Part shown: positions 1,946 through 55,406 of the stretch, piece after piece
Position numbering within the stretch: the first letter of the stretch is position 1
Layout of the letters: each line of letters starts with the position of its first letter
Virus record (IMG/VR): IMGVR_UViG_3300021959_006010
Location: 186,001 to 250,000 of that record
Direction: 5' to 3' (one strand)
Length of the DNA stretch: 64,000 bases
Program-made: the position numbers and the translations under genes
Notes under the pieces: model-generated
Seen by the model: only the letters and a program-made list of their open reading frames with translations
Database searches by the model: none
What the model was told of the DNA's origin: nothing

Positions 1946-2010
1946 TGAGTATCTCCTATTGGTTACATAATAGTTATTAAAAAAGGACCCTTTCGGATCC
2001 TTTTAATGGT

Positions 2011-2496
2011 TTATTTGCCTTCCATTAGTGCAACAGCTTCGTCATATTCTTCTTGACTTACTACACCTTCGCGAAGTAGCTTCATTCTGTTGGCCATATG
2101 TTTAGTTTGGATTTCTTCTTTTGATCCACCAAAGTATGCAACACAATGTCCTTCTTCAATCATTATGTCTGTTACCTTTTCACGCTTGCCTTCGTAACGC
2201 TCTACCCAAAAGTCGCCTAGGATACGTCCGAACTTGCCTTTCATATCTTCACCGTCTTTATTTTCAGTAGTGATTAGTTTGCCGCCTTCTGCTAGAAGCT
2301 CTTTTAATCTATTCTTTGCTGCTGTGCCAAAGACTTTTTCTACTTTGTCGCTAGTGCGTGACTCTGGTGTGTCAATGCCCATAATGCGTACACGTTCGTC
2401 TTTTAACCATACGCCAAATCCTAAGTCAATGTCTACATCAACTGTATCGCCGTCTACACATTTCAGTAGAACTACGTCATATTCGTTTTGTTGCAT
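2011..2496 (-). CDS. Thermonuclease (SNase-like) family nuclease
   Basis: VDGDTVDV...VRIMGIDTPES...GKFGRILG motifs. Confidence 0.85.
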   Translation of the reverse strand: MQQNEYDVVLLKCVDGDTVDVDIDLGFGVWLKDERVRIMGIDTPESRTSDKVEKVFGTAAKNRLKELLAEGGKLITTENKDGEDMKGKFGRILGDFWVERYEGKREKVTDIMIEEGHCVAYFGGSKEEIQTKHMANRMKLLREGVVSQEEYDEAVALMEGK

Positions 2497-2518
2497 TTTT
2501 ACCCTCTCCTGTTAATGC

Positions 2519-2860
2519 TTATTGTTGTGGGTTTTTTGTCCCCCATTTGCGTTCGTATGTGTCATCTGTTCCATACGTGTCTGCCCATTTGTTTTCTGTA
2601 AACTTTGCGAAATCAATTAACATTAAAATTTCTGTATAGTTTTCTTCAATCCATTGTTCGTGATCTTGTAGACGTGCTTTCATTTCTGTTATATCACGTG
2701 CCATATTAACTTCGTTCTCTAAAGCCATACGACTTGTTAGTTCACTTACTTCGCCCTTGAGTGTTTCTATTGTTTGTGCTTGTTGTGCTGTCCACCAAAC
2801 AAATGCACTTACTTGCATAACGATTGCTATAACAACACCTATTCCAAATTTTGCGTTCAT
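2519..2860 (-). CDS. Hypothetical membrane-anchored coiled-coil protein
   Basis: N-terminal hydrophobic helix followed by a heptad region; AGGA RBS. Confidence 0.6.
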   Translation of the reverse strand: MNAKFGIGVVIAIVMQVSAFVWWTAQQAQTIETLKGEVSELTSRMALENEVNMARDITEMKARLQDHEQWIEENYTEILMLIDFAKFTENKWADTYGTDDTYERKWGTKNPQQ

Positions 2861-2956
2861 AGGAATTCCTTTAAAGTTATATACTATGTTTATTTAGTCA
2901 CAAAAAAGGGCAATGTTGCCACTGCCCTTTTATACTGTTTCTTCTATATGTTTTTA

Positions 2957-3757
2957 TTAGAATGAGAAGCTGATGCCTGCTGTTGGAGCAAAATCTTCTG
3001 CGTCGATGTTGTAGTTAGCACCTGCTGTAAGTTCTGCACCACCGATGTTGTATGTGTACTCGCCACCAATGTTTTGGAACGTATCGTCTGTATCACCATT
3101 TAGATATGCTGTTACGCCCATTACAGATGCAACACCTTCGAAGCCTAATCTTTCAGCATCTACGTCATAAGTAACTGTCTTTGATAGACCAACGCCTGCA
3201 ATTTCAATTCCTCCAGCAGTTGCGCCAAGAACAAAGTTTTCACTGTCCATGTTATAGTCGCCTGCTAGTGTAATGTTTGCTAGACCTGCAACGTTACCCA
3301 TTGTGTAAGCACCTTGAATGTTGCTGATGTCTGTTACGTCTGCTGTCCAGTCAGTAAAACCAACTGCTACGGCTGCATCACCTACAGTTACTTTAATTGA
3401 TTCAGTCATTGCTGGTGCTGCAAGTGTTTGCTCGCCTTCTGCTCCAACAAATACACCATTGTCGTTGCCTAGTGCTACGCCAAGGCTGCCAATTGCTGTT
3501 CCGACAGTCCAAGTATCAAGTTCAATTTGATCAGTGTCGTTTGCAATAAAACCTAAGTCAACAGTTCCAAGTGTTCCTGCTGAAAGTCCTAGGTCTAAGC
3601 CAAGTTCTCCGCCCCAGTCGCCTGATGCTTGTTCGCTGAATGTTAGTTCAACCTCACCAGAAAGAACAGGAGTTGGAACTGCTACGTTTTCCGAGTCAGC
3701 AAATGCTGTTGTACCAACAAGCATTGTTGCTGCAAAAACAGATAATAGTTTACGCAT
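2957..3757 (-). CDS. Outer-membrane porin-like beta-barrel protein
   Basis: Signal peptide MRKLL...TTAFA, alternating amphipathic beta-strands, acidic composition, C-terminal ...GISFSF (terminal Phe, BAM-type signal). Confidence 0.7.
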   Translation of the reverse strand: MRKLLSVFAATMLVGTTAFADSENVAVPTPVLSGEVELTFSEQASGDWGGELGLDLGLSAGTLGTVDLGFIANDTDQIELDTWTVGTAIGSLGVALGNDNGVFVGAEGEQTLAAPAMTESIKVTVGDAAVAVGFTDWTADVTDISNIQGAYTMGNVAGLANITLAGDYNMDSENFVLGATAGGIEIAGVGLSKTVTYDVDAERLGFEGVASVMGVTAYLNGDTDDTFQNIGGEYTYNIGGAELTAGANYNIDAEDFAPTAGISFSF

Positions 3758-4807: not shown

Positions 4808-5128
4808 AGTGGAGAGCATTCTGTTGCCCGGGGCTCTCCATAACCGCGAAGGTGCAGATGTTTAGGCTGCGATTGCTACCTCGTCAAAGTTAGCAAAAAC
4901 TTCAGGTTTAAAATTGCTGTTTGCAATTATTGAATTTGGCTGAATAACGTAGGCCAACACGGTTAACTCCACTTCACTTTCACACCTGTCGATCCTATTT
5001 CGACCCCATCAAAAGCATACCCATATATTATATATTGACCTAGGCTATCTGCCTAGCGGGATATGCTTTTGGTGGAGTCGCCGGGTACCGCCCCCGGGTC
5101 CAGAATGTGTCTACGTTGCTTCAACGCT
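4808..5128 (-). ncRNA. ssrA: Circularly permuted (two-piece) tmRNA
   Basis: Acceptor piece ...GACCCGGGGGCGGTACCCGGCGACTCCACCA ends at 5070. A hairpin-forming intervening segment follows. The coding piece starts GGGGTCGAAATAGGATCGAC at 5007. The tag ORF 4924-4862 reads ANSNFKPEVFANFDEVAIAA*. The 3' end has GGCAACAGAA. The 5' and 3' limits are approximate. Confidence 0.92.
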
Positions 5129-5159
5129 AACAGTATTATTTATACACTATATTTGTGCA

Positions 5160-5744
5160 TTAGTCAACTTGTTTTGTAATAATTTCGTAAATCTTTTTCC
5201 AATTCCAAACACAGATTGCATTTCCTGTATAATCTTGGTTATGGTCATGATTAATTAGAATACCGTTAAGGCCTAACTCAATACCAGTATCTACGTTTTG
5301 CGGTTTATCTTCAACCCAATAGCATCCGGTACCTTTATACTCTAACAAAACTTCGTCTTTGTCGGCTCCAGTATCTAAATAAACATATTTTTCAAACACG
5401 GTATCGCCAAACATTTCTCTTAAGTTTTTAGTACGCAAATGCTGTGCATACTGATCGTTGCTTAGGCTTGTAATAGCATGGAAAATATAACCGTGTTCGG
5501 TATGTAACTTTTTAACATAATGCATTGCATCACGTAGTGGAGGTAGTTTGCGGATCCAAGCACTCTCATTAAACATACGTACTAAACGCATTGTTTCGTT
5601 TTTTTCTAATCCGTACTTGATATCCATTTTATAATCACCAGTTACTTTAATTGTGTAACCATGGCGTTTCATCCACTGATCAAAGGCGTACTCCCAATCT
5701 AAAAGTACACCATCGCAATCTGTTAAAATAACTTTATTCTTCAT
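5160..5744 (-). CDS. HAD-family 5'(3')-deoxyribonucleotidase
   Basis: LTDCDGVLLDW (DxDG) and WVEDKP motifs. Confidence 0.8.
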   Translation of the reverse strand: MKNKVILTDCDGVLLDWEYAFDQWMKRHGYTIKVTGDYKMDIKYGLEKNETMRLVRMFNESAWIRKLPPLRDAMHYVKKLHTEHGYIFHAITSLSNDQYAQHLRTKNLREMFGDTVFEKYVYLDTGADKDEVLLEYKGTGCYWVEDKPQNVDTGIELGLNGILINHDHNQDYTGNAICVWNWKKIYEIITKQVD

Positions 5745-28245: not shown

Positions 28246-29445
28246 ATGATAGATAAAGAACCTTTTGAACAAGTAATAGAAACTCTAAAACAAGAAGGCA
28301 AATATCGAGTGTTTAACGATATACTTCGAGAAAGAGGAGATTTTCCAAAAAGTATATGGTATGGTCCGTATGCTATTAAAAATATTACTAATTGGTGTTC
28401 AAATGACTATCTCGGCATGGGTCAAAACAAAGTTGTTATTGATGCTATGCACACTGCACTTGACCAAACAGGAAGTGGGTCAGGTGGAACTAGAAACATT
28501 GGCGGCACATCACATTATCATGTAGCGTTGGAAAGAGAACTAGCGTCTTTGCATAGCAAGGATGGTGCGCTTTTATACTCGTCAGCGTATGTTGCCAATG
28601 AGTGGTCACTAATCGCTTTAAGCAAGATCATTCCCAACATTGTGTTCTTGAGTGATTCAAAAAATCACGCAAGCCTCATACAGGGTATCCGGCACAGTGG
28701 TGCTGACAAGTTAATTTGGCAGCACAATGATATGAGCGATTTAGAGGAGAAATTGGTACAGGTTGCCGCCAGGAATCAAGTCCCCTGCATTGTATTCGAG
28801 TCCGTATATAGTATGGATGGCGATGTGAGTCCAATTTCTTCGATCTGCGATCTAGCAGACGCTTATGGTGCTATAACCTATATTGACGAAGTCCACGCTG
28901 TAGGGTTGTATGGAACAGGTGGAGCAGGGTATCTAGAACATCTAGGTATTCAATCAAGAGTTGATATAGTTAATGGTACATTAGGTAAGGCCTTTGGTGT
29001 TCAGGGCGGTTATATTGCAAGTAACGGGACCGTCGTAGACGCAATTCGCAGTATAGCAAGTGGATTTATTTTTACTACCAGTATGAGTCCTGTGATTTGT
29101 GCTGGCGCCCTAGCATCAATTAAATATTTACGAGACCATAACGAACTAAGAGAACAACACCAAGAAAGAGCAGCTACACTAACACGTATGTTAAAAGAAG
29201 CTGATATCGAAATACATGCAGATGCATGTACCCATATTGTTCCTGTTATGGTGCGTGATGCTGTACGTTGTAAAGCCATGAGTGACTCGTTGCTTAACGA
29301 CTATGGTATATACATACAACCGATCAACTATCCGACAGTTGCGGTTGGAGAAGAGCGTCTTCGCATCGCGCCTACTCCGTTACATACTGATGCGATGATG
29401 AGCGACCTAGTTGTCGCACTAAGAAAGGTCTTTAATGCAAATTAA
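28246..29445 (+). CDS. hemA: 5-aminolevulinate synthase
   Basis: [57 protein letters not shown] (PLP Lys), IQPINYPTV. Confidence 0.95.
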
Positions 29446-33189: not shown

Positions 33190-33398
33190 GATCAATGACT
33201 TATATAGAGAACCTCAACCAGCCCCGCAGGGGCCCCTACACTACTACTACGCATAGACTCTACTACTACACTACTAACACTATAGATATCAATGACTTAG
33301 ACTACTACACTACTATAGTAGTTCAACACTACACTATAAGTCATTGATATTACTACACTACTATACACTACACTACTACTATACAAATCAATCGCTTA
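33190..33398. promoter_or_regulatory. Cluster of four IHF-consensus sites within ACTAC-rich repeats
   Basis: WATCAANNNNTTR matches at 33287-33299 (+), 33337-33349 (-), 33386-33398 (+); one-mismatch copy at 33190-33202; 14-bp palindrome ACTACTATAGTAGT at 33309-33322. Confidence 0.7.
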
Positions 33399-33514
33399 GT
33401 GTAGGGTGTTCAAGTTCTGGCGTCTTTTGGTTTCTTTTAAAAAAATGGTTGACAGGTTGTGGTTTTGATCATATACTATAAAGACAGTTAGGGTAACACA
33501 CAGAGGGAAATCAC

Positions 33515-33799
33515 ATGTTGAAATATCAGAATCTTGCACAGGTAGGCGACCGTATCAGAGCGTATGACTTCCGCGGTGGTCGTGACTACTACATAGAAGG
33601 GGTCGTTACTGCCAAAGGTCGTATTGAAACTCCTCGAGGGGTGTTGATGTATACAGGCTACACCGTTGACATAGATGTGGACACAATGCCTGGTGCTGGC
33701 CGTGTGGGAGATGTTGGTTATGTGCCGTTTGAAACAAGCTTGGACTACGATGAGAGAATTGAACTGGTGGACACGGAGTTTGCATACTGGGGCAGCTGA
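33515..33799 (+). CDS. Early hypothetical protein
   Basis: Own promoter and GAGGGA RBS. Confidence 0.75.
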   Translation: MLKYQNLAQVGDRIRAYDFRGGRDYYIEGVVTAKGRIETPRGVLMYTGYTVDIDVDTMPGAGRVGDVGYVPFETSLDYDERIELVDTEFAYWGS

Positions 33800-33896
33800 T
33801 GAAAAGAACACGCGAACACGAGAACAAAAAAACGGTTGACAGGCGTGTGTGTTGAGGCTATACTGTGTGTATAGTTAAAAACATAGAGGGCACACT

Positions 33897-34064
33897 ATGC
33901 AAACGAACACAAACGAATGGACAACACAGCAGAAGCGCAGGTTAGCGGATGCAGTATTTGAAGCAATTGCACTAGCAGAAGCACTGCGTTTAGACTACAG
34001 GGTGGATGCTGTAGCAGAATTTGCAGAGGACTTGTATGCTGCTGTAGAAGAAGACGCAGTATAA
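33897..34064 (+). CDS. Early hypothetical protein (55 aa)
   Basis: Promoter and GAGGGC RBS; MQTNTNEW... Confidence 0.7.
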   Translation: MQTNTNEWTTQQKRRLADAVFEAIALAEALRLDYRVDAVAEFAEDLYAAVEEDAV

Positions 34065-34148
34065 AAAGTTTAAAAAAACACTTGACAGTGTGCGTGTACT
34101 GTGTTATAGTATACGCATACTAAACATTGCAACAAAAGTGAGGGCTTT

Positions 34149-34598
34149 ATGCAAACAATTAACTACAGCACTACAGTAGCGGACTACTACGAGCACTTAA
34201 CAAATGAGTGTGCGGATGAGACACGTTTTACTATGGATGAACAGTGCTTTGTGCTTGAGTTTTTAGCAGACACACTAAACGCACTTACACAGCTAAACAG
34301 TGAAACACTACGTGAGGAGGGCAACTTTGCACGTATGCAAGACTGTGCGGAAGTAGCGGACAACTACGTAATGCTATTAAACAAGTGCAACAGTGAGTAT
34401 GATGGCGAGGACTGCTATACGTTTACGCTAGAAGATGCGGGTGCTGCTATTTGCAGTTATGACACAGAGTACAGGGAGTGCATATGCGAGCAGTTTGAAG
34501 ATGCGCTAAACGAGTACTTTGCACTTGTACAGCAAAACAAACTGCAAAAACTTGACATTGCAAACTGTTTAGCATGGCGTGTGTTTAACAGTTACTAG
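34149..34598 (+). CDS. Early acidic hypothetical protein
   Basis: Promoter and GAGGGC RBS; no Pro; no TC or CC in the coding strand. Confidence 0.75.
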   Translation: MQTINYSTTVADYYEHLTNECADETRFTMDEQCFVLEFLADTLNALTQLNSETLREEGNFARMQDCAEVADNYVMLLNKCNSEYDGEDCYTFTLEDAGAAICSYDTEYRECICEQFEDALNEYFALVQQNKLQKLDIANCLAWRVFNSY

Positions 34599-34672
34599 AA
34601 ACAAAACACTTGACAAGTACTGTAGCACATGCTATAGTACTTGTACACATTAAATGCATTAGAGGGCAAACT

Positions 34673-34885
34673 ATGCAAGTACACATACTACAACTACAAG
34701 GCACTGGCGACGACGAGTACGCATGGGAAAACGCAAGCGTTTTTGCAAGCTGGGAAGAAGCACAGGAACGTGCTGCGCAAATGAGCAAAGAAGACATAGC
34801 GGAGTACGGCGAAGCGTTTTGGATAATGGGCGAGAACATGCGCATTGAAACGCACGACTTAGTAGACAACAACTGGGGCTACTAA
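34673..34885 (+). CDS. Early acidic hypothetical protein
   Basis: Promoter and GAGGGC RBS; start revised to MQVHIL. Confidence 0.75.
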   Translation: MQVHILQLQGTGDDEYAWENASVFASWEEAQERAAQMSKEDIAEYGEAFWIMGENMRIETHDLVDNNWGY

Positions 34886-35009
34886 TACGCAGGCCCCGCT
34901 GCTATAAGGGCTGCTATACTACAGTATAGGCAAACTATACACAGTTGCACTTGCATTTTGGTGCAACTGTGTTATATTGTTAGCATAACGCATATAGGAG
35001 GGCAAACAT

Positions 35010-35324
35010 ATGCAAGCAACTGTAATTAAAACACTAGACAGTGCAGTGCGTGTAACACTAGTAGAAGATGACGCGGAGTGGCGTGCAGAGTTTGAAGAAT
35101 ACGGATACGACACAGACATGTGGGCTGCATACGGAGACGGAGATGTGTGGCGAGACAACGTACAAGTTACGCATACACTAAACGATGAAGAGTACGGCTT
35201 TATTTGCGGCAATAGTAGTGACAGACGTGTGTACGGCTTTACAGTAGATGTACACAGAGCAGAAGAAGCAGATGGCAACTTTAGCTTTTGGGTAACAGAA
35301 GAACAATACGAACAAATAGGATAA
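35010..35324 (+). CDS. Early acidic hypothetical protein
   Basis: GGAGGGC RBS; no Pro. Confidence 0.75.
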   Translation: MQATVIKTLDSAVRVTLVEDDAEWRAEFEEYGYDTDMWAAYGDGDVWRDNVQVTHTLNDEEYGFICGNSSDRRVYGFTVDVHRAEEADGNFSFWVTEEQYEQIG

Positions 35325-35395
35325 AAAGAGGTTGACAACGTGTGTATGCTATGCTATAGTGTACACACACTAACACAGCATAGAGAGGGCTTTTT

Positions 35396-35665
35396 ATGCA
35401 AAACACAAATACAAAAACTGCACGTAGTATTGTACGCAACATCCTAAAGCAAAACAATGTTATGTATTCCTCGCAAAGTTATACCGACAAATGTGCTAAT
35501 CCTGCATTACGTAACTTGTGCTTCCTAACAAAAAACTTAACGCCTGCAGTTGTGCAACAAATTTCCTCTGCGCTTAACGTTACAAAAGTGCATGCAACAA
35601 AGCCTATGTTTTACAATGTGCATCCGGATGCACGTTATTTGCGCATAGTGCATTGCGCAAAATAA
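35396..35665 (+). CDS. Early basic hypothetical protein
   Basis: Promoter and GAGGGC RBS; no Gly, Glu or Trp. Confidence 0.7.
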   Translation: MQNTNTKTARSIVRNILKQNNVMYSSQSYTDKCANPALRNLCFLTKNLTPAVVQQISSALNVTKVHATKPMFYNVHPDARYLRIVHCAK

Positions 35666-35672
35666 AACTCAA

Positions 35673-35716
35673 TAAAAACAAGCACTTAGCAGAAAAATTA
35701 TAAGTGCTTGTTTTTA
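35673..35716. repeat. 16-bp perfect inverted repeat with a 12-bp spacer
   Basis: TAAAAACAAGCACTTA (35673-35688) / TAAGTGCTTGTTTTTA (35701-35716); an 18-bp direct copy of the left arm lies at 45042-45059. Confidence 0.85.
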
Positions 35717-35801
35717 AACAAAACTTTTTGCTTTACAAATGCATAAACTTGTAGTATATTGTTTGTATAAGTTAACAAGCATACATGCAGAGGAGCACAT
35801 T

Positions 35802-36050
35802 ATGCAAAACACAAACTACGTATTTTTAAACGCACAAAACGCTGCAATTGTTGTAACAGTAAACAATGTAGTTGTTGCTACAGACGTACAAACAGCAGAC
35901 GCACTTGTACAAGTGTTTTTAACACACAACATTAATGTGCTTACAGACACTATTATGTGCAGCAGCAGCATAGATTTTGCTGAAGAGGAGGGCTTTGCTA
36001 CAGACGCTTGTGCGCATAATATTATAGAGGACGCTTTAGCACAGTTGTAA
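35802..36050 (+). CDS. Early hypothetical protein
   Basis: GAGGAG RBS; start revised to MQNTNY. Confidence 0.7.
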   Translation: MQNTNYVFLNAQNAAIVVTVNNVVVATDVQTADALVQVFLTHNINVLTDTIMCSSSIDFAEEEGFATDACAHNIIEDALAQL

Positions 36051-36152
36051 TATACTAAAGTATTGCAAGCACTATACTACGTAGTGCTTGCTTTTTTTGT
36101 AACTTGTGTTATATTGTTTGTATAACGTAACAGCAAATGCGAGGGCCGCAAC

Positions 36153-36503
36153 ATGCAAAACAACATTAAGCGTAACAGCGTAGTAGTAGTAAACTATAAA
36201 AACACACAGCGTTTAGCACTTGTTAAAAGTGTACGTGCTAACAACATGCTAAACGTAACTATGTATTTGTTTGCTAATGCAAGCATAGCTAGCGACTACT
36301 TAGTGCATGCAAGTACAGTAACGCTAACAAGTGTTAGTGCTAAACAGTTTACGCATTTAGCTAAAAGCTATCCCAACTATGCGTGTACTAGTGCTAACAG
36401 CAAACTATTGTTTAAGCTACAGCAACAAGCAGACGCAGCTTATCCGCAGTATGCAGCACTACGCAACAACTATGCAAAGTATACTAGTGCGTTTGCTGCA
36501 TAG
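36153..36503 (+). CDS. Early basic hypothetical protein
   Basis: GAGGGC RBS; 116 aa with no Gly, Glu or Trp. Confidence 0.7.
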   Translation: MQNNIKRNSVVVVNYKNTQRLALVKSVRANNMLNVTMYLFANASIASDYLVHASTVTLTSVSAKQFTHLAKSYPNYACTSANSKLLFKLQQQADAAYPQYAALRNNYAKYTSAFAA

Positions 36504-36583
36504 TACGCTTAAAAAACACTTGACAACTGTGTGTATGTGTGCTACTATGTACACATACACTAAAGCATAACGGAGGGCAGTTT

Positions 36584-36832
36584 ATGCAAAACACACAGTA
36601 CGAAAACGCAGTTATTGCTGCAATTGAAAATTTTGCAAACAGCATTGCAAATTGTGCGCACGACAGCGTAGTAGAAAACAACGACTACGCAATTACAGAC
36701 AGCATAGACAGCATTAACTTTTTGTTTAGCAACTACACAAAATACGACAGTGTACAAGCACTTGCAAACGCTGCACTAGACAGCACACTAGACACTGTAG
36801 TACGTGAAAGCATACATGCACAATTAACGTAA
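36584..36832 (+). CDS. Early hypothetical protein
   Basis: Promoter and GGAGGGC RBS; start revised to MQNTQY. Confidence 0.7.
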   Translation: MQNTQYENAVIAAIENFANSIANCAHDSVVENNDYAITDSIDSINFLFSNYTKYDSVQALANAALDSTLDTVVRESIHAQLT

Positions 36833-36903
36833 AAAAGTAGTTGACAACTGCGTGTACATATGCTATAGTGTATGTACACGTTAACAATGTAAGAGGGCAT
36901 CTT

Positions 36904-37236
36904 ATGTATTACATTTACGAGAACAGCACAACCTACATTATTGGCAAGCCGGACCGCAATGGTGTAGCCCGTCCGGATCATCGCCAGTCGTATAAGACTA
37001 TGGCCGCAGCGAAAGCAGCACTCACACGCATCTGCAAGGCAGAAGGCTTGTTGCCAACCGATCCCAACTATGCACTGTATCGCTATTCGATTGCAGAGGC
37101 CAGCTACTTCCACAGCATGATTGAAAAGAAAGTACTGCGTAAAGTACTAGAAGGCTTTGGTGGCAAGGAGTATTACGAACCTGTTAACACTCCTGCCTAT
37201 ATGTCACCTGCAAGCGAAACCTACTGGAGCATGTAA
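36904..37236 (+). CDS. Early hypothetical protein
   Basis: Promoter and GAGGGC RBS; start revised to MYYIYE. Confidence 0.7.
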   Translation: MYYIYENSTTYIIGKPDRNGVARPDHRQSYKTMAAAKAALTRICKAEGLLPTDPNYALYRYSIAEASYFHSMIEKKVLRKVLEGFGGKEYYEPVNTPAYMSPASETYWSM

Positions 37237-37364
37237 GATGGATCTACTCCAACGATACCCGAACGCACTCGAGCAGCTAGAAATCCTCAAAAAAGATTAT
37301 TTAGGGGTTGACAATTCTGTAGAGGAGTGCTATATTAGTAGTATAACAAATGGAGGGCAATCCA

Positions 37365-37529
37365 ATGCAAGTAGACCGCGAAAGACTGGAACGCATCGTC
37401 AAGATGGCAGAGAATCTCTACTCTGACGGTGAGTACCGCGATATGGTGTTCGATATACTGCGCACAGAACCTGAGCGTAGTGACAGCGACATTGCAAATG
37501 AATTAGCTATGCGTTGGTACGCTCCGTAA
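37365..37529 (+). CDS. Early hypothetical protein (54 aa)
   Basis: Promoter and GGAGGGC RBS; MQVDRERL... Confidence 0.7.
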   Translation: MQVDRERLERIVKMAENLYSDGEYRDMVFDILRTEPERSDSDIANELAMRWYAP

Positions 37530-37597
37530 AAAAGAGGTTGACACTGTAGCACTTCGGTGCTATAGTGTATGTATAAGTTAACAAAGAGGGCTACACA

Positions 37598-38552: not shown

Positions 38553-38629
38553 GGGCCTTTAGCTCAATCGGTTAGAGCACCGGACTCATAATCCGTAGGT
38601 TGCGAGTTCGAGTCTCGCAGGGCCCACCA
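38553..38629 (+). tRNA. tRNA-Ile2 (CAU, lysidine type), reads AUA
   Basis: Cloverleaf with CAT anticodon, paired G1-C72, encoded CCA; resembles ileX-type rather than initiator tRNA. Confidence 0.8.
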
Positions 38630-38634
38630 AGTAA

Positions 38635-38711
38635 CTGCCCTTAGCTCAGCTGGATAGAGCAACAGCCTTCTAAGCTGTGGGTCGTAGGTTCGAATCCTAC
38701 AGGGCAGGCCA
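38635..38711 (+). tRNA. tRNA-Arg (UCU)
   Basis: Cloverleaf with TCT anticodon, GTTCGAATC T-loop, encoded CCA. Confidence 0.93.
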
Positions 38712-38715
38712 ATTA

Positions 38716-38799
38716 GCCCGCGTGGTGGAATAGGTAGACACAAGGGACTTAAAATCCCTCGCTTATGGCGTGCCAGTTCGAGTCTGGCCGCGGGCACCA
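38716..38799 (+). tRNA. tRNA-Leu (UAA)
   Basis: Class II cloverleaf with a long variable arm, TAA anticodon, encoded CCA. Confidence 0.93.
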
Positions 38800-39046: not shown

Positions 39047-40045
39047 ATGAATATCACTATCGTAGAAGGCACATATAAAATTCGAGGCAACGACACTTCA
39101 GTAGCAGGTCAAACGTTTCCTCTAGTAGAAGAGTTTAGAATGGGTAAGAATGGCGGGTACGTAACTGTTGATGGATCAGCAGTAGCAGGCTTCCCGGATC
39201 GTAATATCAAGATCAAGGTTGTAAGCGCCGACAGTTACGTACCCGCGGGGGAAGGCCCCGCTGATAGACAGCGCGAAGAAAGCGATGAAGAGATCATCGA
39301 ACGAATTCGCACTCGCTTTGACATGCTAAAAGAAATGACCAAGGCTGTCAAGAAGCAAGATGTCAAAGCAATGATCGTAAGTGGCCCTCCAGGTGTTGGT
39401 AAGAGCCACGGCGTAGAAGAAGTACTTGATCGCTATAACACTATGCAGATGTTAGGCGGAGGCAAGCAGTTCGAAGTTATCAAAGGTGCTATGTCGCCCA
39501 TTGGTTTGTACTGCAAGCTTTTCAAGATGGCAGACAAAGGTAAGGTTGTAGTGTTTGACGACTGTGACTCGATCTTCCAGGACGAGCTAAGCCTTAACAT
39601 CCTAAAGGCTGCTCTGGATTCAAAGAAAGATCGTTGGATCCACTGGAACACTGATTCGTTCAAGTTGCGCAACGAAGGTGTGCCAGACAAGTTCAAGTTC
39701 GAAGCAAGTGCGATCTTTATCACGAACCTAAAGTTTGACAAAGTCAAAGGTAAGATGCGTGAGCACTTGGAAGCACTAGAGTCACGCTGTCACTACATGG
39801 ACCTTACCATTGACACAGAACGAGACAAGATGCTCAGAATCAAGCAGGTCATTCGTGACGGTATGCTAGATAGCTATAAGCTGAGTGATGAGATCAAAGA
39901 AGAGATTGTAGACTTCTGCGATATTAATAAGAAGCGACTACGTGAATTGTCCCTAAGAACAGTTTTGAAAGTCGCCGATTTGGCACTTGCCTTTCCAGAT
40001 CGTTGGGAAGCATTTGCCGAAAATACCGTGATGCGTCGAGCCTAG
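39047..40045 (+). CDS. AAA+ family ATPase (early)
   Basis: Walker A GPPGVGKS, Walker B VVFDDCD, IFITN, ALESRC; promoter and GAGGGC RBS. Confidence 0.85.
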   Translation: MNITIVEGTYKIRGNDTSVAGQTFPLVEEFRMGKNGGYVTVDGSAVAGFPDRNIKIKVVSADSYVPAGEGPADRQREESDEEIIERIRTRFDMLKEMTKAVKKQDVKAMIVSGPPGVGKSHGVEEVLDRYNTMQMLGGGKQFEVIKGAMSPIGLYCKLFKMADKGKVVVFDDCDSIFQDELSLNILKAALDSKKDRWIHWNTDSFKLRNEGVPDKFKFEASAIFITNLKFDKVKGKMREHLEALESRCHYMDLTIDTERDKMLRIKQVIRDGMLDSYKLSDEIKEEIVDFCDINKKRLRELSLRTVLKVADLALAFPDRWEAFAENTVMRRA

Positions 40046-40063
40046 CTCCGCTGATTGGTAGAC

Positions 40064-40212
40064 ACTGTGAGCGGGTCCGCCCTCAACTTGCTCACAGTAC
40101 ATTGTGGTTGGACCGCCCTCATCCAACTACAGTAGAGTAGACGAACGCCCTCACGCTCTACTCTAATAGTGCCCTCGCAGTGTATGCCCTCACACTGCGG
40201 GGGCTTTTTTTT
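40064..40212 (+). ncRNA. Four-hairpin RNA with GCCCUC loops, ending in an intrinsic terminator
   Basis: Stems 40064-72/40090-98, 40103-12/40122-31, 40133-41/40157-65 and 40171-83/40192-204. Each loop carries GCCCTC. T8 run at 40205-40212. Confidence 0.8.
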
Positions 40213-47776: not shown

Positions 47777-49246
47777 CTACTTGTTTGCAGCAGCCGTCCA
47801 AACCTTAACTCCATATTGTTTTTCAAATGCTTGTGCATCTTCTACAGTGTTAACAATGGGTTTACCCTTGATGTTAAGTGAGGTATTTAGTAGCACAGGA
47901 CAGCCTGTAGCTTCGTACCAACGTTCTAGCAGTTTTCTAAAGCCCACGCTTTGCGTTGAAGAAACTGTCTGTACCCGAGAGGTGCCGTCCCTGTGCGTGA
48001 TTGCAGGTAGTCCAGGATCCTTGCAAGTTGCAGTGTATTGCATGTAGGGGTTTGCATATCCGTCGAAATAGGTAGACGCATGTTCCTCCAATACTGCTGG
48101 CGCAAAAGGTCTAAACTTCTGTCGTTGTTTGATTTCGTTAACTCTATCTTTAATGTCTGGCCTTCTGGGGTCTGCAAGGAGGGAGCGGTGTCCAAAAGCT
48201 CTGGGCCCGAACTCTGCCCTGCCGTTGGCCACGCCAACAATACCAGTAGTAAGCAACTCGTTAAGTACTTCTTCAACAGGATAATCTCCTTCTATGTTAT
48301 AACCTGTGTACACATGATCCATTTCCATGTGTTGTTTTTTATGGGCTAGTACACAACCTATTGCACTGCCTGCATCACCCGGGTTAGGCATGATCCATAC
48401 GTTATCGAAAAACTTGTATGCTAAATGGTTAGCACTGCAATTTAACGCACATCCTCCCATTAACACAAGGTTTTTGCTAGGCGCCATTATGCGGGCTACA
48501 TTCAAAATACCTTGAAAAATCTTTTCATACAGGTTCTGGGCTGCTGCCGCTATGTCAAAATAGTCTTGTTCAGTGGTCAAATCCTTGCGCCAGTCTAAGC
48601 ACCCTCTATGTAAATTGCGTTTAAAAGTAATAGGGTGTCCATAAGGGTCAACAAAATCTTCAACCATAGCTTGGTACAAACGATCTGGGTCACCGTATGC
48701 AGCCATACCCATAAGAATGTATTCGTCTTCTTGAGGTTTTAATCCAACCCTTTGCGTGATTGCCGAGTACCATAGTCCCACGGAATGTGGATATTTTTGG
48801 GAATAGACCTTTTTGAGTCTTCCTTCTTTACCATGCCAGATAGTAAGTGTATCAAACTCTCCAATGCTGTCGATACTAATAACGCAGGCTTCTGTAAAAG
48901 GACTAGTATAATAACCGGCAGCAGCATGGGAAAGATGATGATCAGTATACCTAATAGGAGCATGTATCCCATAAGATCCAAGATACTTACGAATATTGTT
49001 TTCACCCAACCGTATTCCTTGCCCTGCTCTAAATTGTCTAACAGTTTTGACAAGGGGTCTTTCATACCAAATAATTTCATCTGGTTCTCCCCATTTCCTT
49101 GCATATTCAATTAACTCGTTATTTAAGTCGGGGTCGTTTTTTATACCGCTAAAACGTTCGCTATGACTCGCAAACTCTAGTCCGTCTTCTGAAAAAACAG
49201 CTAGAGCAGCATCATGACTGTTAGCACTTATACCCCATGTAATCAT
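47777..49246 (-). CDS. Carbamoyltransferase (NodU/CmcH/TobZ family)
   Basis: SHDAALA, HHLSHAAAGY, GGCALNC, GDAGSAIG, GRAEFGPRAFGHRS, RQKFRPFAP, LNTSLN. Confidence 0.92.
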   Translation of the reverse strand: MITWGISANSHDAALAVFSEDGLEFASHSERFSGIKNDPDLNNELIEYARKWGEPDEIIWYERPLVKTVRQFRAGQGIRLGENNIRKYLGSYGIHAPIRYTDHHLSHAAAGYYTSPFTEACVISIDSIGEFDTLTIWHGKEGRLKKVYSQKYPHSVGLWYSAITQRVGLKPQEDEYILMGMAAYGDPDRLYQAMVEDFVDPYGHPITFKRNLHRGCLDWRKDLTTEQDYFDIAAAAQNLYEKIFQGILNVARIMAPSKNLVLMGGCALNCSANHLAYKFFDNVWIMPNPGDAGSAIGCVLAHKKQHMEMDHVYTGYNIEGDYPVEEVLNELLTTGIVGVANGRAEFGPRAFGHRSLLADPRRPDIKDRVNEIKQRQKFRPFAPAVLEEHASTYFDGYANPYMQYTATCKDPGLPAITHRDGTSRVQTVSSTQSVGFRKLLERWYEATGCPVLLNTSLNIKGKPIVNTVEDAQAFEKQYGVKVWTAAANK

Positions 49247-52711: not shown

Positions 52712-52968
52712 TATTCGAATCCTAATGATGATAAAAACAAAATAACTAATACTACTATTATTTTTGTTAATAACATTTTTCCTGCTTCTTTGCCAACTTC
52801 TTTAGGTGCAGGTTTCCAAGTTTCCCACTTACCTAGTTTGGCCCATTCTTCTTTACTTGTCCACAAACTGCCAACATGTTTTAACCATTCTTTAAAAGAT
52901 TTGTCACTATGACGTTTACGTTCTCTTCGCCATTCTGATAATATATCAAATATATCTTTAAACGTCAT
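52711..52968 (-). CDS. Hypothetical Trp/Lys-rich protein with a C-terminal TM helix
   Basis: Start revised to MTFKDIF, overlapping the upstream stop. Confidence 0.55.
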   Translation of the reverse strand: MTFKDIFDILSEWRRERKRHSDKSFKEWLKHVGSLWTSKEEWAKLGKWETWKPAPKEVGKEAGKMLLTKIIVVLVILFLSSLGFE

Positions 52969-53392
52969 CTTTAAATTCCATATAGCGTTGTACAACTTTA
53001 AACAATTGCTGGTGTGTATCATCAAACCACTGTGCTACATGATAATTAACATATGCCTTATAAGGACGTTCAAATATTTTATTTGTATCATCATACTCGC
53101 TTTTGTTAACAGTATCCATCCAGATAGCAAAATCAGCATCAAATACTTTGCGTATTTCGTCCGTTGGTGCTACAAAGTCTGCTATGGCAATTTTGCCTGC
53201 CATAGTAACACCGTCGGCTAAATGCCGCATTCGTTCTGCTTGACGCATTCGCCCGGACGGGCTAAAATCCCAATCGTTATATTGTTCTCTTATATTGTCA
53301 GCATTAAGATGCACTCCGCCAAGTAACTCTGCAAACGGTTTAGCAAGAGTTGTTTTTCCTGATCCTGGCAATCCAAAAATTAATATTCTCAT
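52958..53392 (-). CDS. Adenylylsulfate-kinase-like P-loop kinase
   Basis: IFGLPGSGKTT, LNADNIR, DWDFS..GR.RQAERM, IADFVAP. Confidence 0.75.
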   Translation of the reverse strand: MRILIFGLPGSGKTTLAKPFAELLGGVHLNADNIREQYNDWDFSPSGRMRQAERMRHLADGVTMAGKIAIADFVAPTDEIRKVFDADFAIWMDTVNKSEYDDTNKIFERPYKAYVNYHVAQWFDDTHQQLFKVVQRYMEFKDDV

Positions 53393-54794: not shown

Positions 54795-55406
54795 TTAGAT
54801 TACCTTTAAATTTCCTGATACCGACAAACGTGTAGTATCTGTTTTGAATGGATTAGTGTAATGATCTAAATTAGCTGGAAAAATTATAAAATCTCTATTA
54901 GACGGATAATATGCTAGATAATCTGTTGACTTAAAAATATCCTTGTGTTGGTCTGTACTAAAATATCTAAACACAATATTTCCCGGACAATATTGCATGT
55001 CTACATCTTTTAAATTATTAATTTCTTTAGATAGATCAGGAATGTCAAGATAAAGTACAAACGAAGCATCGCAATCACTATGATAGTGGGGCGGTCTCCA
55101 TTCGTTTTGTTTTTGTATATTAATCCATGCATTAACTAATGTTAATTTTTTGTTGCCGATATTATTAGAACTCCAGTTTCTTTCGTATACATTAACATAC
55201 ATATCAAAATAAGGCTGAAGTGCAGTTTTTAAAAAATTTACACTGTCGTCATCAAAATTATACTCTTCTTCAAGATTTGATAATCTATGATCTAACGGTT
55301 GATTAAGACCTTTAGATCTTTCTAATATATTCAATCTTAAATCTTCCGTTATTTCTGTTTTTAACAGCAACGGTCCCCATTGGGCAAGTGTATAATTTAA
55401 ATTCAT
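54795..55406 (-). CDS. 2OG-Fe(II) oxygenase-family protein
   Basis: AWINIQ...PPHYH, SFVLYL, IIFPANLDHY, RLSVSGN. Confidence 0.75.
   Translation of the reverse strand: MNLNYTLAQWGPLLLKTEITEDLRLNILERSKGLNQPLDHRLSNLEEEYNFDDDSVNFLKTALQPYFDMYVNVYERNWSSNNIGNKKLTLVNAWINIQKQNEWRPPHYHSDCDASFVLYLDIPDLSKEINNLKDVDMQYCPGNIVFRYFSTDQHKDIFKSTDYLAYYPSNRDFIIFPANLDHYTNPFKTDTTRLSVSGNLKVI

What the first reader, a model, noticed from the sequence alone, without database searches (positions are those of the whole stretch)
33727..36900. ~3.2-kb island almost free of TC and CC dinucleotides on the coding strand
Seen by manual scan: 33727-35441 (~1.7 kb) has no TC, and CC occurs only inside the conserved AGGCCCCGC repeat. 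35671-36899 has only two TC (both at Tyr-Pro junctions) and a few CC. Consequences: five ORFs have no Pro, Ser is encoded by AGY, and eight consecutive ORFs start ATG CAA (MQ...). Normal composition resumes at ~36900. Hypotheses (inference): (a) it removes all palindromic sites containing GA/TC/GG/CC (GATC, GANTC, GGCC, CCGG, CCWGG, TCGA) from first-entering DNA; (b) it keeps mRNA or ssDNA unable to pair with GAGG, leaving the RBS exposed to ribosomes and to the GCCCUC RNA; (c) it avoids YC-specific damage or enzymes (UV C>T signature, TC-preferring deaminases, DarT TNTC); (d) it avoids context-specific base modification.
Basis: partly seen in the sequence, partly recalled or inferred. Interest (0 to 1): 0.87.

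Follow-up and report, generated by a model that had tools for sequence, protein, structure and literature searches.

The report
Early phage genes purged of TC/CC
In a clade of marine/estuarine jumbo phages, a block of small early genes has been rewritten so that the coding strand contains almost no C preceded by T or C, which even removes proline from the proteins. This looks like evasion of something that reads that dinucleotide, and nothing like it turned up in my searches of open-access papers and preprints.

Summary
TC is absent from 33635-35441 (1808 nt) and CC from 33726-34893. In 35670-36899 only 2 TC and 4 CC remain. The longest YC-free run (Y = T or C) elsewhere in the window is 150 nt, and 224 nt in about 1 Mb of unrelated viral DNA.

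The island is an array of eight ORFan genes. Each has a near-consensus sigma-70 promoter, a GAGGGC ribosome-binding site and an ATG-CAA start.

The avoidance acts on dinucleotides, not codons: 46 Y|C codon junctions are expected and 2 are observed. It follows the coding strand and recurs in at least nine related phage genomes. It persists through 45-90% protein divergence: 118 of 120 homologs of one island gene have no proline. About 30 natural variants avoid creating YC.

General restriction-site avoidance and a first-entering position are poorly supported.

A new twist is that YC and its complement GR (GA/GG) are mutually exclusive gene by gene. Gene 35396-35665 is the mirror type: YC normal, GR nearly absent.

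My best reading (0.4) is selected target-site loss against a YC-reading enzyme that acts on single-stranded sense nucleic acid. Rho evasion (0.2) and DNA-level models remain as rivals. I found no published precedent.

The parts
33449..33477 (+). First early promoter of the + strand array (TTGACA-17-TATACT). It drives g0.
33515..33799 (+). g0 (94 aa). Normal composition (17 YC, 3 Pro). The left edge of the island lies inside its 3' part: last TC at 33634, last CC at 33725.
33836..34064 (+). Cassette 1: promoter 33836-33864, GAGGGC 33886, g1 33897-34064 (55 aa, MQ start). 0 YC, 0 Pro. Class A (GA/GG normal).
34082..34598 (+). Cassette 2: promoter 34082-34110, GAGGGC 34140, g2 34149-34598 (149 aa). 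0 YC. The family has 120 listed metagenomic homologs, 118 of them without Pro.
34610..34885 (+). Cassette 3: promoter 34610-34638, GAGGGC 34662, g3 34673-34885 (70 aa). 0 YC.
34891..34901 (+). Conserved oriented 11-mer AGGCCCCGCTG. It holds the only CC dinucleotides retained in 33726-35441.
34939..35324 (+). Cassette 4: 13-bp hairpin 34939-34972 overlapping a TTGCAT-16-TATATT promoter (34951-34978), GAGGGC 34998, g4 35010-35324 (104 aa). 0 YC.
35332..35715 (+). Cassette 5: promoter 35332-35360, GAGGGC 35385, g5 35396-35665 (89 aa), then hairpin plus T-run 35680-35715. Mirror type (class C): 17 YC and 4 Pro but only 3 GA/GG. Four homologs in relatives are YC-free.
35732..36098 (+). Cassette 6: promoter TTTACA-17-TATATT 35732-35760, g6 35802-36050 (82 aa), terminator 36065-36098. 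0 YC, GA/GG reduced. Class B.
36097..36503 (+). Cassette 7: weak promoter-like site around 36097-36126 (read by eye), GAGGGCC 36141, g7 36153-36503 (116 aa). 5 YC inside the gene (both Pro codons follow Tyr); GA/GG 0.6 per 100 nt; 2 Asp/Glu/Gly residues in all. Class B.
36520..36832 (+). Cassette 8: promoter 36520-36548, GAGGGC 36573, g8 36584-36832 (82 aa). 0 YC. Class B.
36841..37236 (+). Right boundary: promoter 36841-36869 and leader are still YC-free; the first TC is at 36900. g9 36904-37236 (110 aa) has normal composition. It is a conserved gene that flanks the island in relatives.

Best explanation
What it is. The island is an array of hypervariable early gene cassettes, each with its own promoter. 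All the genes are ORFans, and I infer they serve host takeover or counter-defence.

What acts on it. Gene-by-gene purifying selection has removed every 5'-YC-3' (TC and CC) from the sense strand. The cost is proline, the TCN serine codons and otherwise preferred codons such as TTC and ATC.

Proposed mechanism (inferred, not shown). The transcripts, or the non-template DNA strand displaced while they are made, offer no substrate to a single-strand-specific activity that reads pyrimidine-C and inactivates in one hit. Candidates are an endoribonuclease or an RNA/ssDNA base-modifying effector, from the host or from the phage's own shut-off machinery. These genes would therefore be expressed whatever that activity does. 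The rest of the genome would rely on protection that comes later.

The subset also purged of GA/GG (class B) reflects either a second constraint of the same kind or the same constraint acting on the other strand.

Shown: the avoidance, its selection, its strand, its conservation and its cassette organisation.
Inferred: the existence and nature of the YC-reading activity, and the early timing.
For: Extent.
- Depletion is near-absolute: 9 YC in 2945 nt of the window island and 40 in 13.3 kb pooled from six phages, against about 1000 expected.
- 37 of 52 island genes have zero YC. This fits a one-hit target better than a multi-site one.

Level of action.
- It crosses codon boundaries (46 junctions expected, 2 observed) and overrides codon preference: TTT 28 against TTC 0, while AAC 46 against AAT 8.

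Strand.
- It follows the coding strand, including two genes on the opposite strand in L005 5998-6657.

Persistence.
- Islands are present in L002, L005, L009, L010, L013, L133, L134, L135, and a leaky one in L136.
- 118 of 120 g2 homologs (45-90% identity) have no Pro.
- About 30 natural variant sites in four metagenomes create no YC, although 23% of random substitutions would. Linked double changes at 34930/34931 and 35699/35700 avoid a YC that either single change would create.

Selection rather than mutation.
- C is kept after purines, and TT (o/e 1.22) and CT (1.07) are barely raised.
- A YC-bearing g5 allele persists inside the island.

Rarity.
- No comparable run exists in about 1 Mb of other viral DNA, in T7, in T5 or in PA5oct. 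This points to a clade-specific agent rather than a universal one.

Precedent.
- A dinucleotide-specific single-strand RNA-targeting defence is known: CmdT acts on GA (bioRxiv 10.1101/2024.02.24.581662).

Motif hint.
- Residual YC are followed by A at 0.3x and by G at 2x expectation. The motif may be YCH, especially YCA.
Against: - No YC-specific nuclease or modifier is identified in the window or known to me. The agent is hypothetical.
- Non-island early genes carry the same promoter and ribosome-binding site but have normal YC (7.1 per 100 nt). Early timing or a special need must therefore be assumed.
- In L133 and L010 the island is not first in the array.
- Gene g5 sits inside the island with 17 YC.
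- YC residuals concentrate in GA/GG-poor genes (7 of 10 against 4 of 42, p = 2e-4). A simple single-strand target model explains this only with an extra assumption, such as weaker expression of class B genes or R-loop exposure limited to G-rich transcripts.
- Gaps between cassettes are also depleted (0.63 per 100 nt). That fits read-through transcription but equally fits a DNA-level constraint.
Confidence: 0.4

Rival explanations
1. Rho evasion. Each of the six clefts of Rho's primary binding site binds one YC dinucleotide on nascent RNA. Transcripts with no YC cannot load Rho, so early transcription from the strong promoters is immune to premature termination even when ribosomes lag.
For: - Rho is the only bacterial factor known to read exactly YC, and single YC mutations lower termination (PMC5314796; PMC13323073).
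- Coding-strand purine bias as Rho avoidance is documented (PMC13323073).
- All 48 long ORFs of the window are purine-rich on the sense strand (56%). Sense YC is half of antisense YC (5.9 against 11.5 per 100 nt), so the island could be the extreme of a genome-wide trend.
- Island RNAs are predicted to be structured, and class A is G-rich; both disfavour Rho loading.
- In phage T4, Rho restricts in vitro transcription to immediate-early RNA (PMC2988021).
- The host is probably an alphaproteobacterium, inferred from a phage-borne alpha-type tmRNA. From general knowledge, that group has Rho.
Against: - Rho needs several YC within 60-90 nt, so near-total removal is more than required.
- The genes are short, each has its own promoter, and their ribosome-binding sites are strong.
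- YC is tolerated precisely in the G-poor genes, and g5 (YC-rich, GA/GG-free) would be an ideal Rho loading site. This is the opposite of the expected gradient.
- Early regions of T7 and T5 are transcribed by the polymerase of a host where Rho matters, yet they show nothing similar.
Confidence: 0.2
2. A DNA-level constraint that needs YC on both strands (equivalently, YC and GA/GG on one strand). Candidates are blanket removal of all palindromic restriction sites containing GA/TC/GG/CC (the reader's (a)), or avoidance of double-strand breaks from closely opposed nicks or deaminated cytosines. Keeping one strand YC-free is then enough.
For: - It explains all three gene classes and the gene-scale exclusion of YC and GA/GG (Spearman -0.52, p = 9e-5). 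It also explains the mirror gene g5, and residual YC lying far from GA/GG (median 22.5 against 6 nt).
- Promoters and gaps between cassettes are depleted too.
- GATC, TCGA and CCGG are absent from 13.3 kb of pooled islands.
Against: - Protecting about 1% of a 275-kb genome is pointless unless that DNA is alone in the cell. The island is internal to the array in L133 and L010, and no termini could be mapped.
- The same palindromes are at expected frequency elsewhere in the genome.
- Other palindromes are abundant in the island.
- GGCC survives in the conserved 11-mer and in GAGGGCCG.
- All 37 zero-YC genes chose the coding strand. Coding cost could explain this.
- A 111-nt gap in L005 carries 14 YC and 13 GR, but it may be an inserted element.
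Confidence: 0.15
3. Avoidance of the phage's own context-specific DNA modification (the reader's (d)). If virion DNA carries a bulky modification on G in 5'-GR-3' or on a base in YC, a YC-free coding strand leaves the template strand of these genes free of GR and so unmodified. The unmodified host polymerase could then read it at once.
For: - From memory, not checked here: preQ0-type 7-deazaguanine in phage CAjan was reported at GA and GGC, close to GR.
- The window encodes a P-loop kinase, a 2OG-Fe(II) oxygenase, a carbamoyltransferase and a PLP aminotransferase. These could belong to a base-hypermodification pathway.
Against: - No transglycosylase or deazaguanine synthesis genes are seen in the 64-kb window. 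The other roughly 210 kb were not examined.
- Known phage modifications do not generally block host polymerase.
- Gene g5 has a GR-rich template strand.
- Non-island early genes would be equally affected.
Confidence: 0.1
4. Non-adaptive burn-out. A YC-preferring ssDNA cytosine deaminase repeatedly hits the displaced non-template strand of these heavily transcribed genes and has simply mutated every YC away.
For: - YC is the classic APOBEC3 target context, and TC depletion is a known footprint in human viruses (PMC7449416, abstract seen).
- Pooled islands are about 9 points lower in G+C than the rest of the early region.
Against: - TT and CT are barely raised, C content stays at 17.5-19%, and Leu and Phe are not enriched.
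- g5 keeps 17 YC under the same kind of promoter, and a related YC-bearing allele is shared with L009.
- Neighbouring early genes with the same promoters are unaffected.
- Variant spectra show no C>T excess.
Confidence: 0.07
5. RNA-pairing design (the reader's (b)). Without UC/CC nothing in the mRNA can pair with the GAGG of the ribosome-binding site. The site therefore stays open to ribosomes and to the conserved GCCCUC-loop RNA.
For: - All early genes share GAGGGC.
- A conserved RNA with 2-5 GCCCUC loops lies downstream.
- g5, the one YC-rich gene, contains two CCUC motifs and has the least accessible site (0.24).
Against: - Island RNAs are more structured than shuffles.
- Mean accessibility of the site is 0.53 in island genes against 0.58 in non-island early genes.
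- Removing every YC is far more than needed.
- Eleven or more early genes with the same site keep normal YC.
Confidence: 0.03

Closest known systems
Coding-strand purine bias as Rho avoidance (PMC13323073) and Rho utilization sites made of YC dinucleotides (PMC5314796, PMC6144790)
   Same: Sequence-encoded removal of pyrimidine-C from sense transcripts, strand-specific, constraining codon and amino-acid use. The whole phage shows the mild form: 56% purine and a two-fold sense/antisense YC asymmetry.
   Different: Here the removal is near-absolute, confined to 1-3.5 kb of short early genes that each have a promoter, and relaxed in G-poor genes, the opposite of what Rho predicts. Nothing comparable is present in T7 or T5 early regions.
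Restriction-site avoidance in first-entering or early DNA (T5 first-step-transfer DNA lacking EcoRI sites; single-orientation EcoP15I sites in T7). Cited from general knowledge, not checked here.
   Same: Cis-encoded immunity of an early region by loss of target sequence, while the rest of the genome relies on later protection. Strand-biased site loss is a known trick.
   Different: The lost unit is a class of dinucleotides, not a 4-8 bp site. Other palindromes are abundant. The leading-end position is not supported. The loss reaches into protein composition.
APOBEC3 footprint (TC depletion) in human viruses (PMC7449416)
   Same: Depletion of the YC target context of a single-strand cytosine deaminase in viral genomes.
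   Different: The footprint in those viruses is partial. Here depletion is about 25-fold to total, without the matching excess of TT/CT products, and no bacterial YC-specific anti-phage deaminase is known to me.
Site-less mRNAs that escape sequence-specific mRNA interferases (ACA-less mRNAs and MazF; general knowledge), and dinucleotide-specific RNA ADP-ribosylation by CmdT (bioRxiv 10.1101/2024.02.24.581662)
   Same: Transcripts without the enzyme's motif stay functional. CmdT shows that defences can read a dinucleotide on single-stranded RNA.
   Different: No enzyme for YC is known. The CmdT authors considered escape by losing a dinucleotide implausible. This island shows such a loss is achievable over kilobases, and class B genes also lose GA/GG.
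Promoter-early stem-loop (PeSL) mobile regulatory cassettes in hyperplastic regions of T4-type phages (PMC2839356, PMC4122927); SPO1 host-takeover module (general knowledge)
   Same: Arrays of small ORFan early genes, each with its own strong early promoter, shuffled by recombination at the shared regulatory motif. Many cassette-to-cassette joints are seen in metagenomes, and gene content differs between relatives.
   Different: Those systems are not reported to carry a dinucleotide exclusion. Only two cassettes here have a terminator hairpin, and one has a hairpin overlapping its promoter.

Membership tests
Rho-evading (rut-free) transcripts | Depletion of YC dinucleotides on the nascent sense RNA | tested here: met
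   0.2-0.36 YC per 100 nt in island transcript bodies, against 5.9-7.1 in other genes.
Rho-evading (rut-free) transcripts | Constraint strongest where RNA is C-rich and G-poor, relaxed where G-rich or structured | tested here: not met
   YC is tolerated in GA/GG-poor genes and is essentially zero (mean 0.10 per 100 nt) in GR-rich genes (7 of 10 against 4 of 42, p = 2e-4). g5 is YC-rich and GR-free.
Rho-evading (rut-free) transcripts | Host possesses Rho, and termination of YC-restored transcripts depends on Rho | not testable with these tools
   Host is inferred only from a phage-borne alpha-type permuted tmRNA.
Restriction-site avoidance in first-entering DNA | Under-representation of palindromic recognition sites in general | tested here: not met
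   Only YC/GR-containing palindromes are missing. TGCA, GTAC, ACGT, TTAA and GCGC are at or near expectation in the islands.
Restriction-site avoidance in first-entering DNA | Region lies at the leading end of the injected genome | tested here: inconclusive
   Only assembled contigs were available, and no molecule ends were seen. In L133 and L010 the island is preceded by 3.7-6.6 kb of + strand small genes of normal composition. Two contigs do end within 1 kb of the array start (L002, L010).
Deaminase (APOBEC-like) mutational footprint | Loss of the target context with a matching gain of the product context (TT, CT) and of T | tested here: not met
   TT o/e is 1.22 and CT 1.07. T is 25% and C is still 17.5%, relocated behind purines.
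PeSL-type mobile early-promoter cassettes | Small ORFan genes, each preceded by an early promoter, with mosaic content between relatives and recombination at the regulatory motif | tested here: met
   Eight near-consensus + strand promoters. No Pfam or PHROG matches. 25 protein clusters, 15 of them singletons, among 49 island proteins clustered from 9 genomes. Multiple joints between cassettes in four metagenomes.
PeSL-type mobile early-promoter cassettes | Composite terminator stem-loop directly joined to the promoter | tested here: inconclusive
   Hairpins at 34939-34972 (overlapping a promoter), 35680-35715 and 36065-36098. The other cassettes have none.
Site-less mRNAs escaping a sequence-specific RNA-targeting enzyme | Transcripts lack the motif | tested here: met
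   37 of 52 island genes have no YC at all.
Site-less mRNAs escaping a sequence-specific RNA-targeting enzyme | A matching enzyme with that specificity exists in the host or the phage | not testable with these tools
   None was recognised among window proteins. The staphylococcal-nuclease homolog at 2011-2496 is not known to be YC-specific.

The most novel reading that the evidence does not exclude
The island is the genomic shadow of an undiscovered activity that attacks single-stranded RNA or DNA at 5'-YC-3', perhaps YCA. It could be a host anti-phage effector or a phage host-shut-off enzyme. This phage clade has answered it by deleting a whole dinucleotide class from its first-line genes, and with it proline. 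This is an escape route that was judged implausible for dinucleotide-reading defences. The mirror classes (GA/GG-free genes) may mark a second, complementary activity.
Probability: 0.4. Interest if true: 0.9.

Novelty: new variant of a known kind. Interest (0 to 1): 0.8.

Why it matters
Target-site avoidance is well known for 4-8 bp restriction sites, and in a mild form for deaminase or Rho contexts. Here a dinucleotide class is removed almost completely over kilobases. The removal holds through deep divergence and constant cassette shuffling, and it is strong enough to ban an amino acid.

Three things follow.
- It shows that escape from a dinucleotide-reading factor by sequence loss is evolutionarily attainable.
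- It gives a simple sequence signature for a special class of early genes in uncultured jumbo phages: YC-free runs of 400 nt or more, and Pro-free ORFans starting MQ.
- It points to an unidentified reader of YC that can be looked for directly with wild-type and YC-restored gene pairs.

Tried and rejected
- Chance or composition: rejected by the run-length comparison, the codon-resampling null and the codon-order null.
- Codon or tRNA-level bias: rejected, because Y|C is also avoided across codon junctions and C-ending codons are preferred after purines.
- Unstructured mRNA or an exposed ribosome-binding site: rejected by folding.
- General restriction-site avoidance: not supported.
- First-entering or first-in-array position: not supported in L133 and L010. 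Read-level terminus mapping was impossible because only assembled contigs were served.
- RNA evidence: no RNA run holds this DNA.
- Function of island proteins: no Pfam or PHROG hits. The g2 model (pLDDT 76) is a helical protein with no PDB neighbour.
- A comparable island in the distant relative PA5oct, in T7 and in T5: absent.
- A collection-wide DNA-pattern scan for the cassette start gave mostly random hits. It served only as a null set.
- A hairpin around the AGGCCCCGCTG motif: flanks do not covary consistently, so it looks like a sequence motif rather than a structure.
- Transcript body against inter-cassette gap: gaps are only about 2-3 fold less depleted. This does not separate RNA-level from DNA-level models.
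- Literature: none of the six full-text searches turned up a report of YC-free phage genes.

Full report
**1.

On the + strand there is no TC from 33635 to 35441 (1808 nt) and no CC from 33726 to 34893. The only CC up to 35441 are the three inside AGGCCCCGC at 34894-34896.

From 35670 to 36899 there are two TC, both at TAT|CCN Tyr-Pro junctions, and four CC. Ordinary composition resumes at 36900.

For comparison:
- The longest run free of both dinucleotides anywhere else in the window, on either strand, is 150 nt.
- In about 116 unrelated viral loci (~1 Mb) the median longest run is 97 nt and the maximum 224 nt.
- In T7 and the first 50 kb of T5 the maximum is 118 nt.

I write YC for TC plus CC, and GR for the complementary GA plus GG.

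Two nulls confirm the signal. Resampling synonymous codons for the actual proteins predicts 5-14 YC per gene, and six genes have none. Shuffling codon order predicts 46 Y|C junctions across codon boundaries, and two are observed.

The avoidance therefore acts on the dinucleotide, not on codons or tRNAs. It also overrides codon preference: TTT 28 against TTC 0 and ATT/ATA against no ATC, while AAC is preferred 46:8 and GAC 36:13.

Six of the eight genes have no proline, and all 34 serines in the seven YC-depleted genes counted (g1-g4, g6-g8) are AGY.

**2. What the region is.**

The window comes from a 275-kb viral contig. It is distantly related to Pseudomonas jumbo phage PA5oct: 49% identity for one marker protein.

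It carries ribonucleotide reductase, a replication module, three tRNAs and an alpha-proteobacterial-type permuted tmRNA. That suggests an alphaproteobacterial host. The DNA is found in marine and estuarine metagenomes.

From 33449 to about 44600 the + strand carries at least 17 near-consensus TTGACA-17-TATA(G/C)T promoters. It also carries 19 ribosome-binding sites of the unusual form GAGGGC. Neither occurs in that form on the other strand.

The island is the first eight cassettes of this early array. Each cassette has a promoter, a leader of about 30 nt, GAGGGC, ATG CAA and a 55-149 aa ORF. There are hairpin terminators after the fifth and sixth genes.

None of the proteins matches Pfam or PHROGs. 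A confident model of the most conserved one (g2) is helical and has no PDB neighbour.

**3. It is conserved and actively maintained.**

YC-free blocks of 0.8-3.5 kb occur in related phage contigs:
- L013 (6248-9745)
- L002 (485-2933)
- L005 (4102-7577)
- L010 (4586-5448)
- L009 (9241-10022)
- L133 (8561-12030)
- L134 (664-2312)
- L135 (3955-5008)
- L136 (a leaky version)

Relatives L008 and L011 lack one near the conserved flanking gene g9. L012 has a low-YC stretch elsewhere.

Pooled over 13.3 kb from six phages there are 17 TC and 23 CC, where base composition predicts about 590 and 400.

Gene content differs between relatives. Among the 49 island proteins clustered from nine genomes there are 25 clusters, 15 of them singletons.

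Contigs from four metagenomes show many joints between cassettes at the shared promoter and ribosome-binding-site region. This is the behaviour described for promoter-early stem-loop cassettes of T4-type phages (PMC2839356, PMC4122927).

Despite this turnover:
- 37 of 52 island genes have no YC at all.
- Of 120 metagenomic homologs of g2 (45-90% identity), 118 have no proline and 94 start MQ.
- About 30 variant positions inside the island create no YC, although 23% of random substitutions would.
- Two linked double substitutions (34930/34931 and 35699/35700) avoid a YC that one of the two changes (G>C at 34930, A>C at 35700) would create if made alone. Variants just outside the island create YC freely.

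**4. Strand and transcript relations.**

In L005 two island genes lie on the opposite strand, and there the opposite strand is the YC-free one. The clean strand is therefore always the coding strand.

Residual YC are about three times denser in stop-to-start gaps than in transcript bodies once the two YC-bearing genes are set aside. Gaps are still ten-fold depleted.

Residual YC cluster in three places:
- the conserved motif AGGCCCCGCTG;
- terminator tails;
- just upstream of -35 boxes.

They are followed by A at 0.3x and by G at 2x expectation.

**5.

The genes fall into three types.
- Class A (for example g1-g4) has no YC and normal GR. The proteins are acidic.
- Class B (g6-g8, and many genes in relatives) lacks YC and is also poor in GR. 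The proteins have almost no Asp, Glu or Gly.
- Class C is gene g5 (35396-35665), the apparent hole in the island. It has normal YC (17) but only 3 GR.

Four homologs of g5 in other phages have YC = 0 with GR of 22-40. The L009 homolog has 6 YC and 4 GR.

Across the 52 genes, YC and GR densities are negatively correlated (Spearman -0.52, p = 9e-5). Genes with 0.6 or more YC per 100 nt are 7 of the 10 GR-poor genes but only 4 of the other 42 (p = 2e-4). Residual YC lie a median of 22.5 nt from the nearest GR, against 6 nt for random positions.

**6.

(b) is not supported. Island RNAs are predicted to fold more stably than mononucleotide shuffles (z = -1.2 and -2.8). The ribosome-binding site is no more accessible than in the non-island early genes (0.53 against 0.58).

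(a) is weak as stated.
- Palindromes without YC/GR are abundant in the islands.
- GATC, GANTC, CCGG and TCGA occur at expected frequency in the rest of the genome.
- In L133 and L010 the island is preceded by 3.7-6.6 kb of + strand small genes of normal composition.
- Termini could not be mapped, because only assembled contigs were available.
- However, the YC/GR exclusion is what any mechanism needing both partners predicts. A DNA-level variant (palindromes, opposed nicks, or opposed deaminations) cannot be dismissed.

(c) and (d) cannot be tested here. A purely mutational C>T decay is disfavoured.
- C is retained behind purines.
- TT and CT are barely raised, and Leu and Phe are not enriched.
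- A YC-bearing g5 allele persists under the same kind of promoter.

**7. Rho.**

The one bacterial factor known to read exactly YC is the primary binding site of Rho: six clefts, one YC each, and single YC mutations reduce termination (PMC5314796). Purine bias of coding strands has been shown to be Rho avoidance (PMC13323073).

All 48 long ORFs of the window are purine-rich (56%), with half as many YC on the sense strand as on the antisense strand. The island could therefore be the extreme of a genome-wide trend.

Several things argue against Rho as the sole driver.
- Total removal is more than Rho evasion requires.
- The genes are short, each has a promoter, and they should be well translated.
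- YC is tolerated in the G-poor genes, and g5 looks like an ideal Rho loading site.
- T7 and T5 early regions show nothing comparable (sense YC 7.6-9.1 per 100 nt).

**8. Verdict.**

Three things are shown:
- a strongly selected, coding-strand, dinucleotide-level exclusion;
- it affects a class of shuffling early ORFan cassettes;
- it is conserved in a clade of marine/estuarine jumbo phages.

The rest is inferred. I commit, at 0.4, to target-site loss against a one-hit, single-strand-specific activity that reads YC. A dinucleotide-reading RNA-targeting defence, CmdT on GA, is a precedent, and its authors thought escape by site loss implausible.

The rivals and their weights are:
- Rho evasion, 0.2;
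- a both-strand DNA-level constraint, 0.15;
- avoidance of the phage's own context-specific DNA modification, 0.1;
- mutational burn-out, 0.07;
- RNA pairing with the ribosome-binding site, 0.03.

All models share one unexplained point. Neighbouring early genes with the same promoters and ribosome-binding sites are not purged.

None of the six full-text searches turned up a prior description.

Noticed in passing
window 40060-40205 (+); L002 8560-8700; L003 733-790; L004 658-720; L005 11032-11090; also L009, L010, L011, L013, L134, L135: Downstream of the conserved AAA-like gene (39047-40045) lies a series of 2-5 hairpins. Each shows GCCCUC in or beside its loop, and the series ends in a terminator. 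GCCCUC is the exact complement of the early-gene ribosome-binding site GAGGGC. Loops are conserved while stem sequences differ between relatives. It is a candidate small RNA that titrates or shuts off early translation.
   Followed up: partly
window 32877, 33118, 34891, 39253 (+); 15 or more further copies in L002, L005, L008, L009, L010, L013, L133: An oriented 11-mer, AGGCCCCGCTG, is invariant in 17 aligned copies. It is always on the strand of early transcription and often sits just after a stop codon. Its flanks do not form a consistent hairpin. It is the only CC-rich sequence tolerated inside the islands. Its function is unknown; a protein site, a processing site or a Chi-like site are possibilities.
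   Followed up: partly
window 4808-5171 (-): A phage-encoded two-piece (permuted) tmRNA of the alphaproteobacterial type (Rfam RF01849, 128 bits). ARAGORN predicts the tag ANSNFKPEVFANFDEVAIAA.
   Followed up: partly
window 206-3757 (-): Three genes show intermediate depletion on their coding strand: CC o/e 0.24-0.34, YC 3.0-4.6 per 100 nt, Pro 0.6-1.5%. They are a 579-aa protein with an endosialidase-chaperone domain, a staphylococcal-nuclease homolog (2011-2496) and a 266-aa ORF.
   Followed up: partly
window 38553-38799 (+): A tRNA cluster of Met(CAT), Arg(TCT) and Leu(TAA) lies just downstream of the island. TTA and AGA are codons that begin without C. Island genes use both TTR and CTN for Leu, so no clear link was seen.
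   Followed up: no
window 33230-33385 (+); L002 195-250: ACTAC-rich short repeats lie directly upstream of the first early promoter. In L002 the equivalent position holds four copies of TGTGGATAA, the complement of the DnaA-box consensus.
   Followed up: no
whole window outside 33400-37000: TCNGA is strongly under-represented (97 against 178 expected, z = -5.7). AGCT and CATG are also low (z about -4). GATC and GANTC are not.
   Followed up: no
L005 6725-6835: A 111-nt segment between divergent island promoters has normal YC (14) and GR (13). It is flanked by a direct repeat, ACTTAACATGTTAA, so it is possibly a small inserted element.
   Followed up: no
window 28246-29445 (+), 47777-49246 (-), 52958-53392 (-), 54795-55406 (-): A PLP aminotransferase, a NodU/TobZ-type carbamoyltransferase, a small P-loop kinase and a 2OG-Fe(II) oxygenase are encoded here. 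Together they could belong to a DNA base-hypermodification pathway.
   Followed up: no
window 34885-37581 (joints seen in runs X3, X4, X6, X7): Metagenome contigs join different cassettes at the promoter and ribosome-binding-site region (for example 34885>36511, 35721/35739>37557, 36132>36583, 37581>37840). This shows ongoing cassette shuffling in natural populations.
   Followed up: partly
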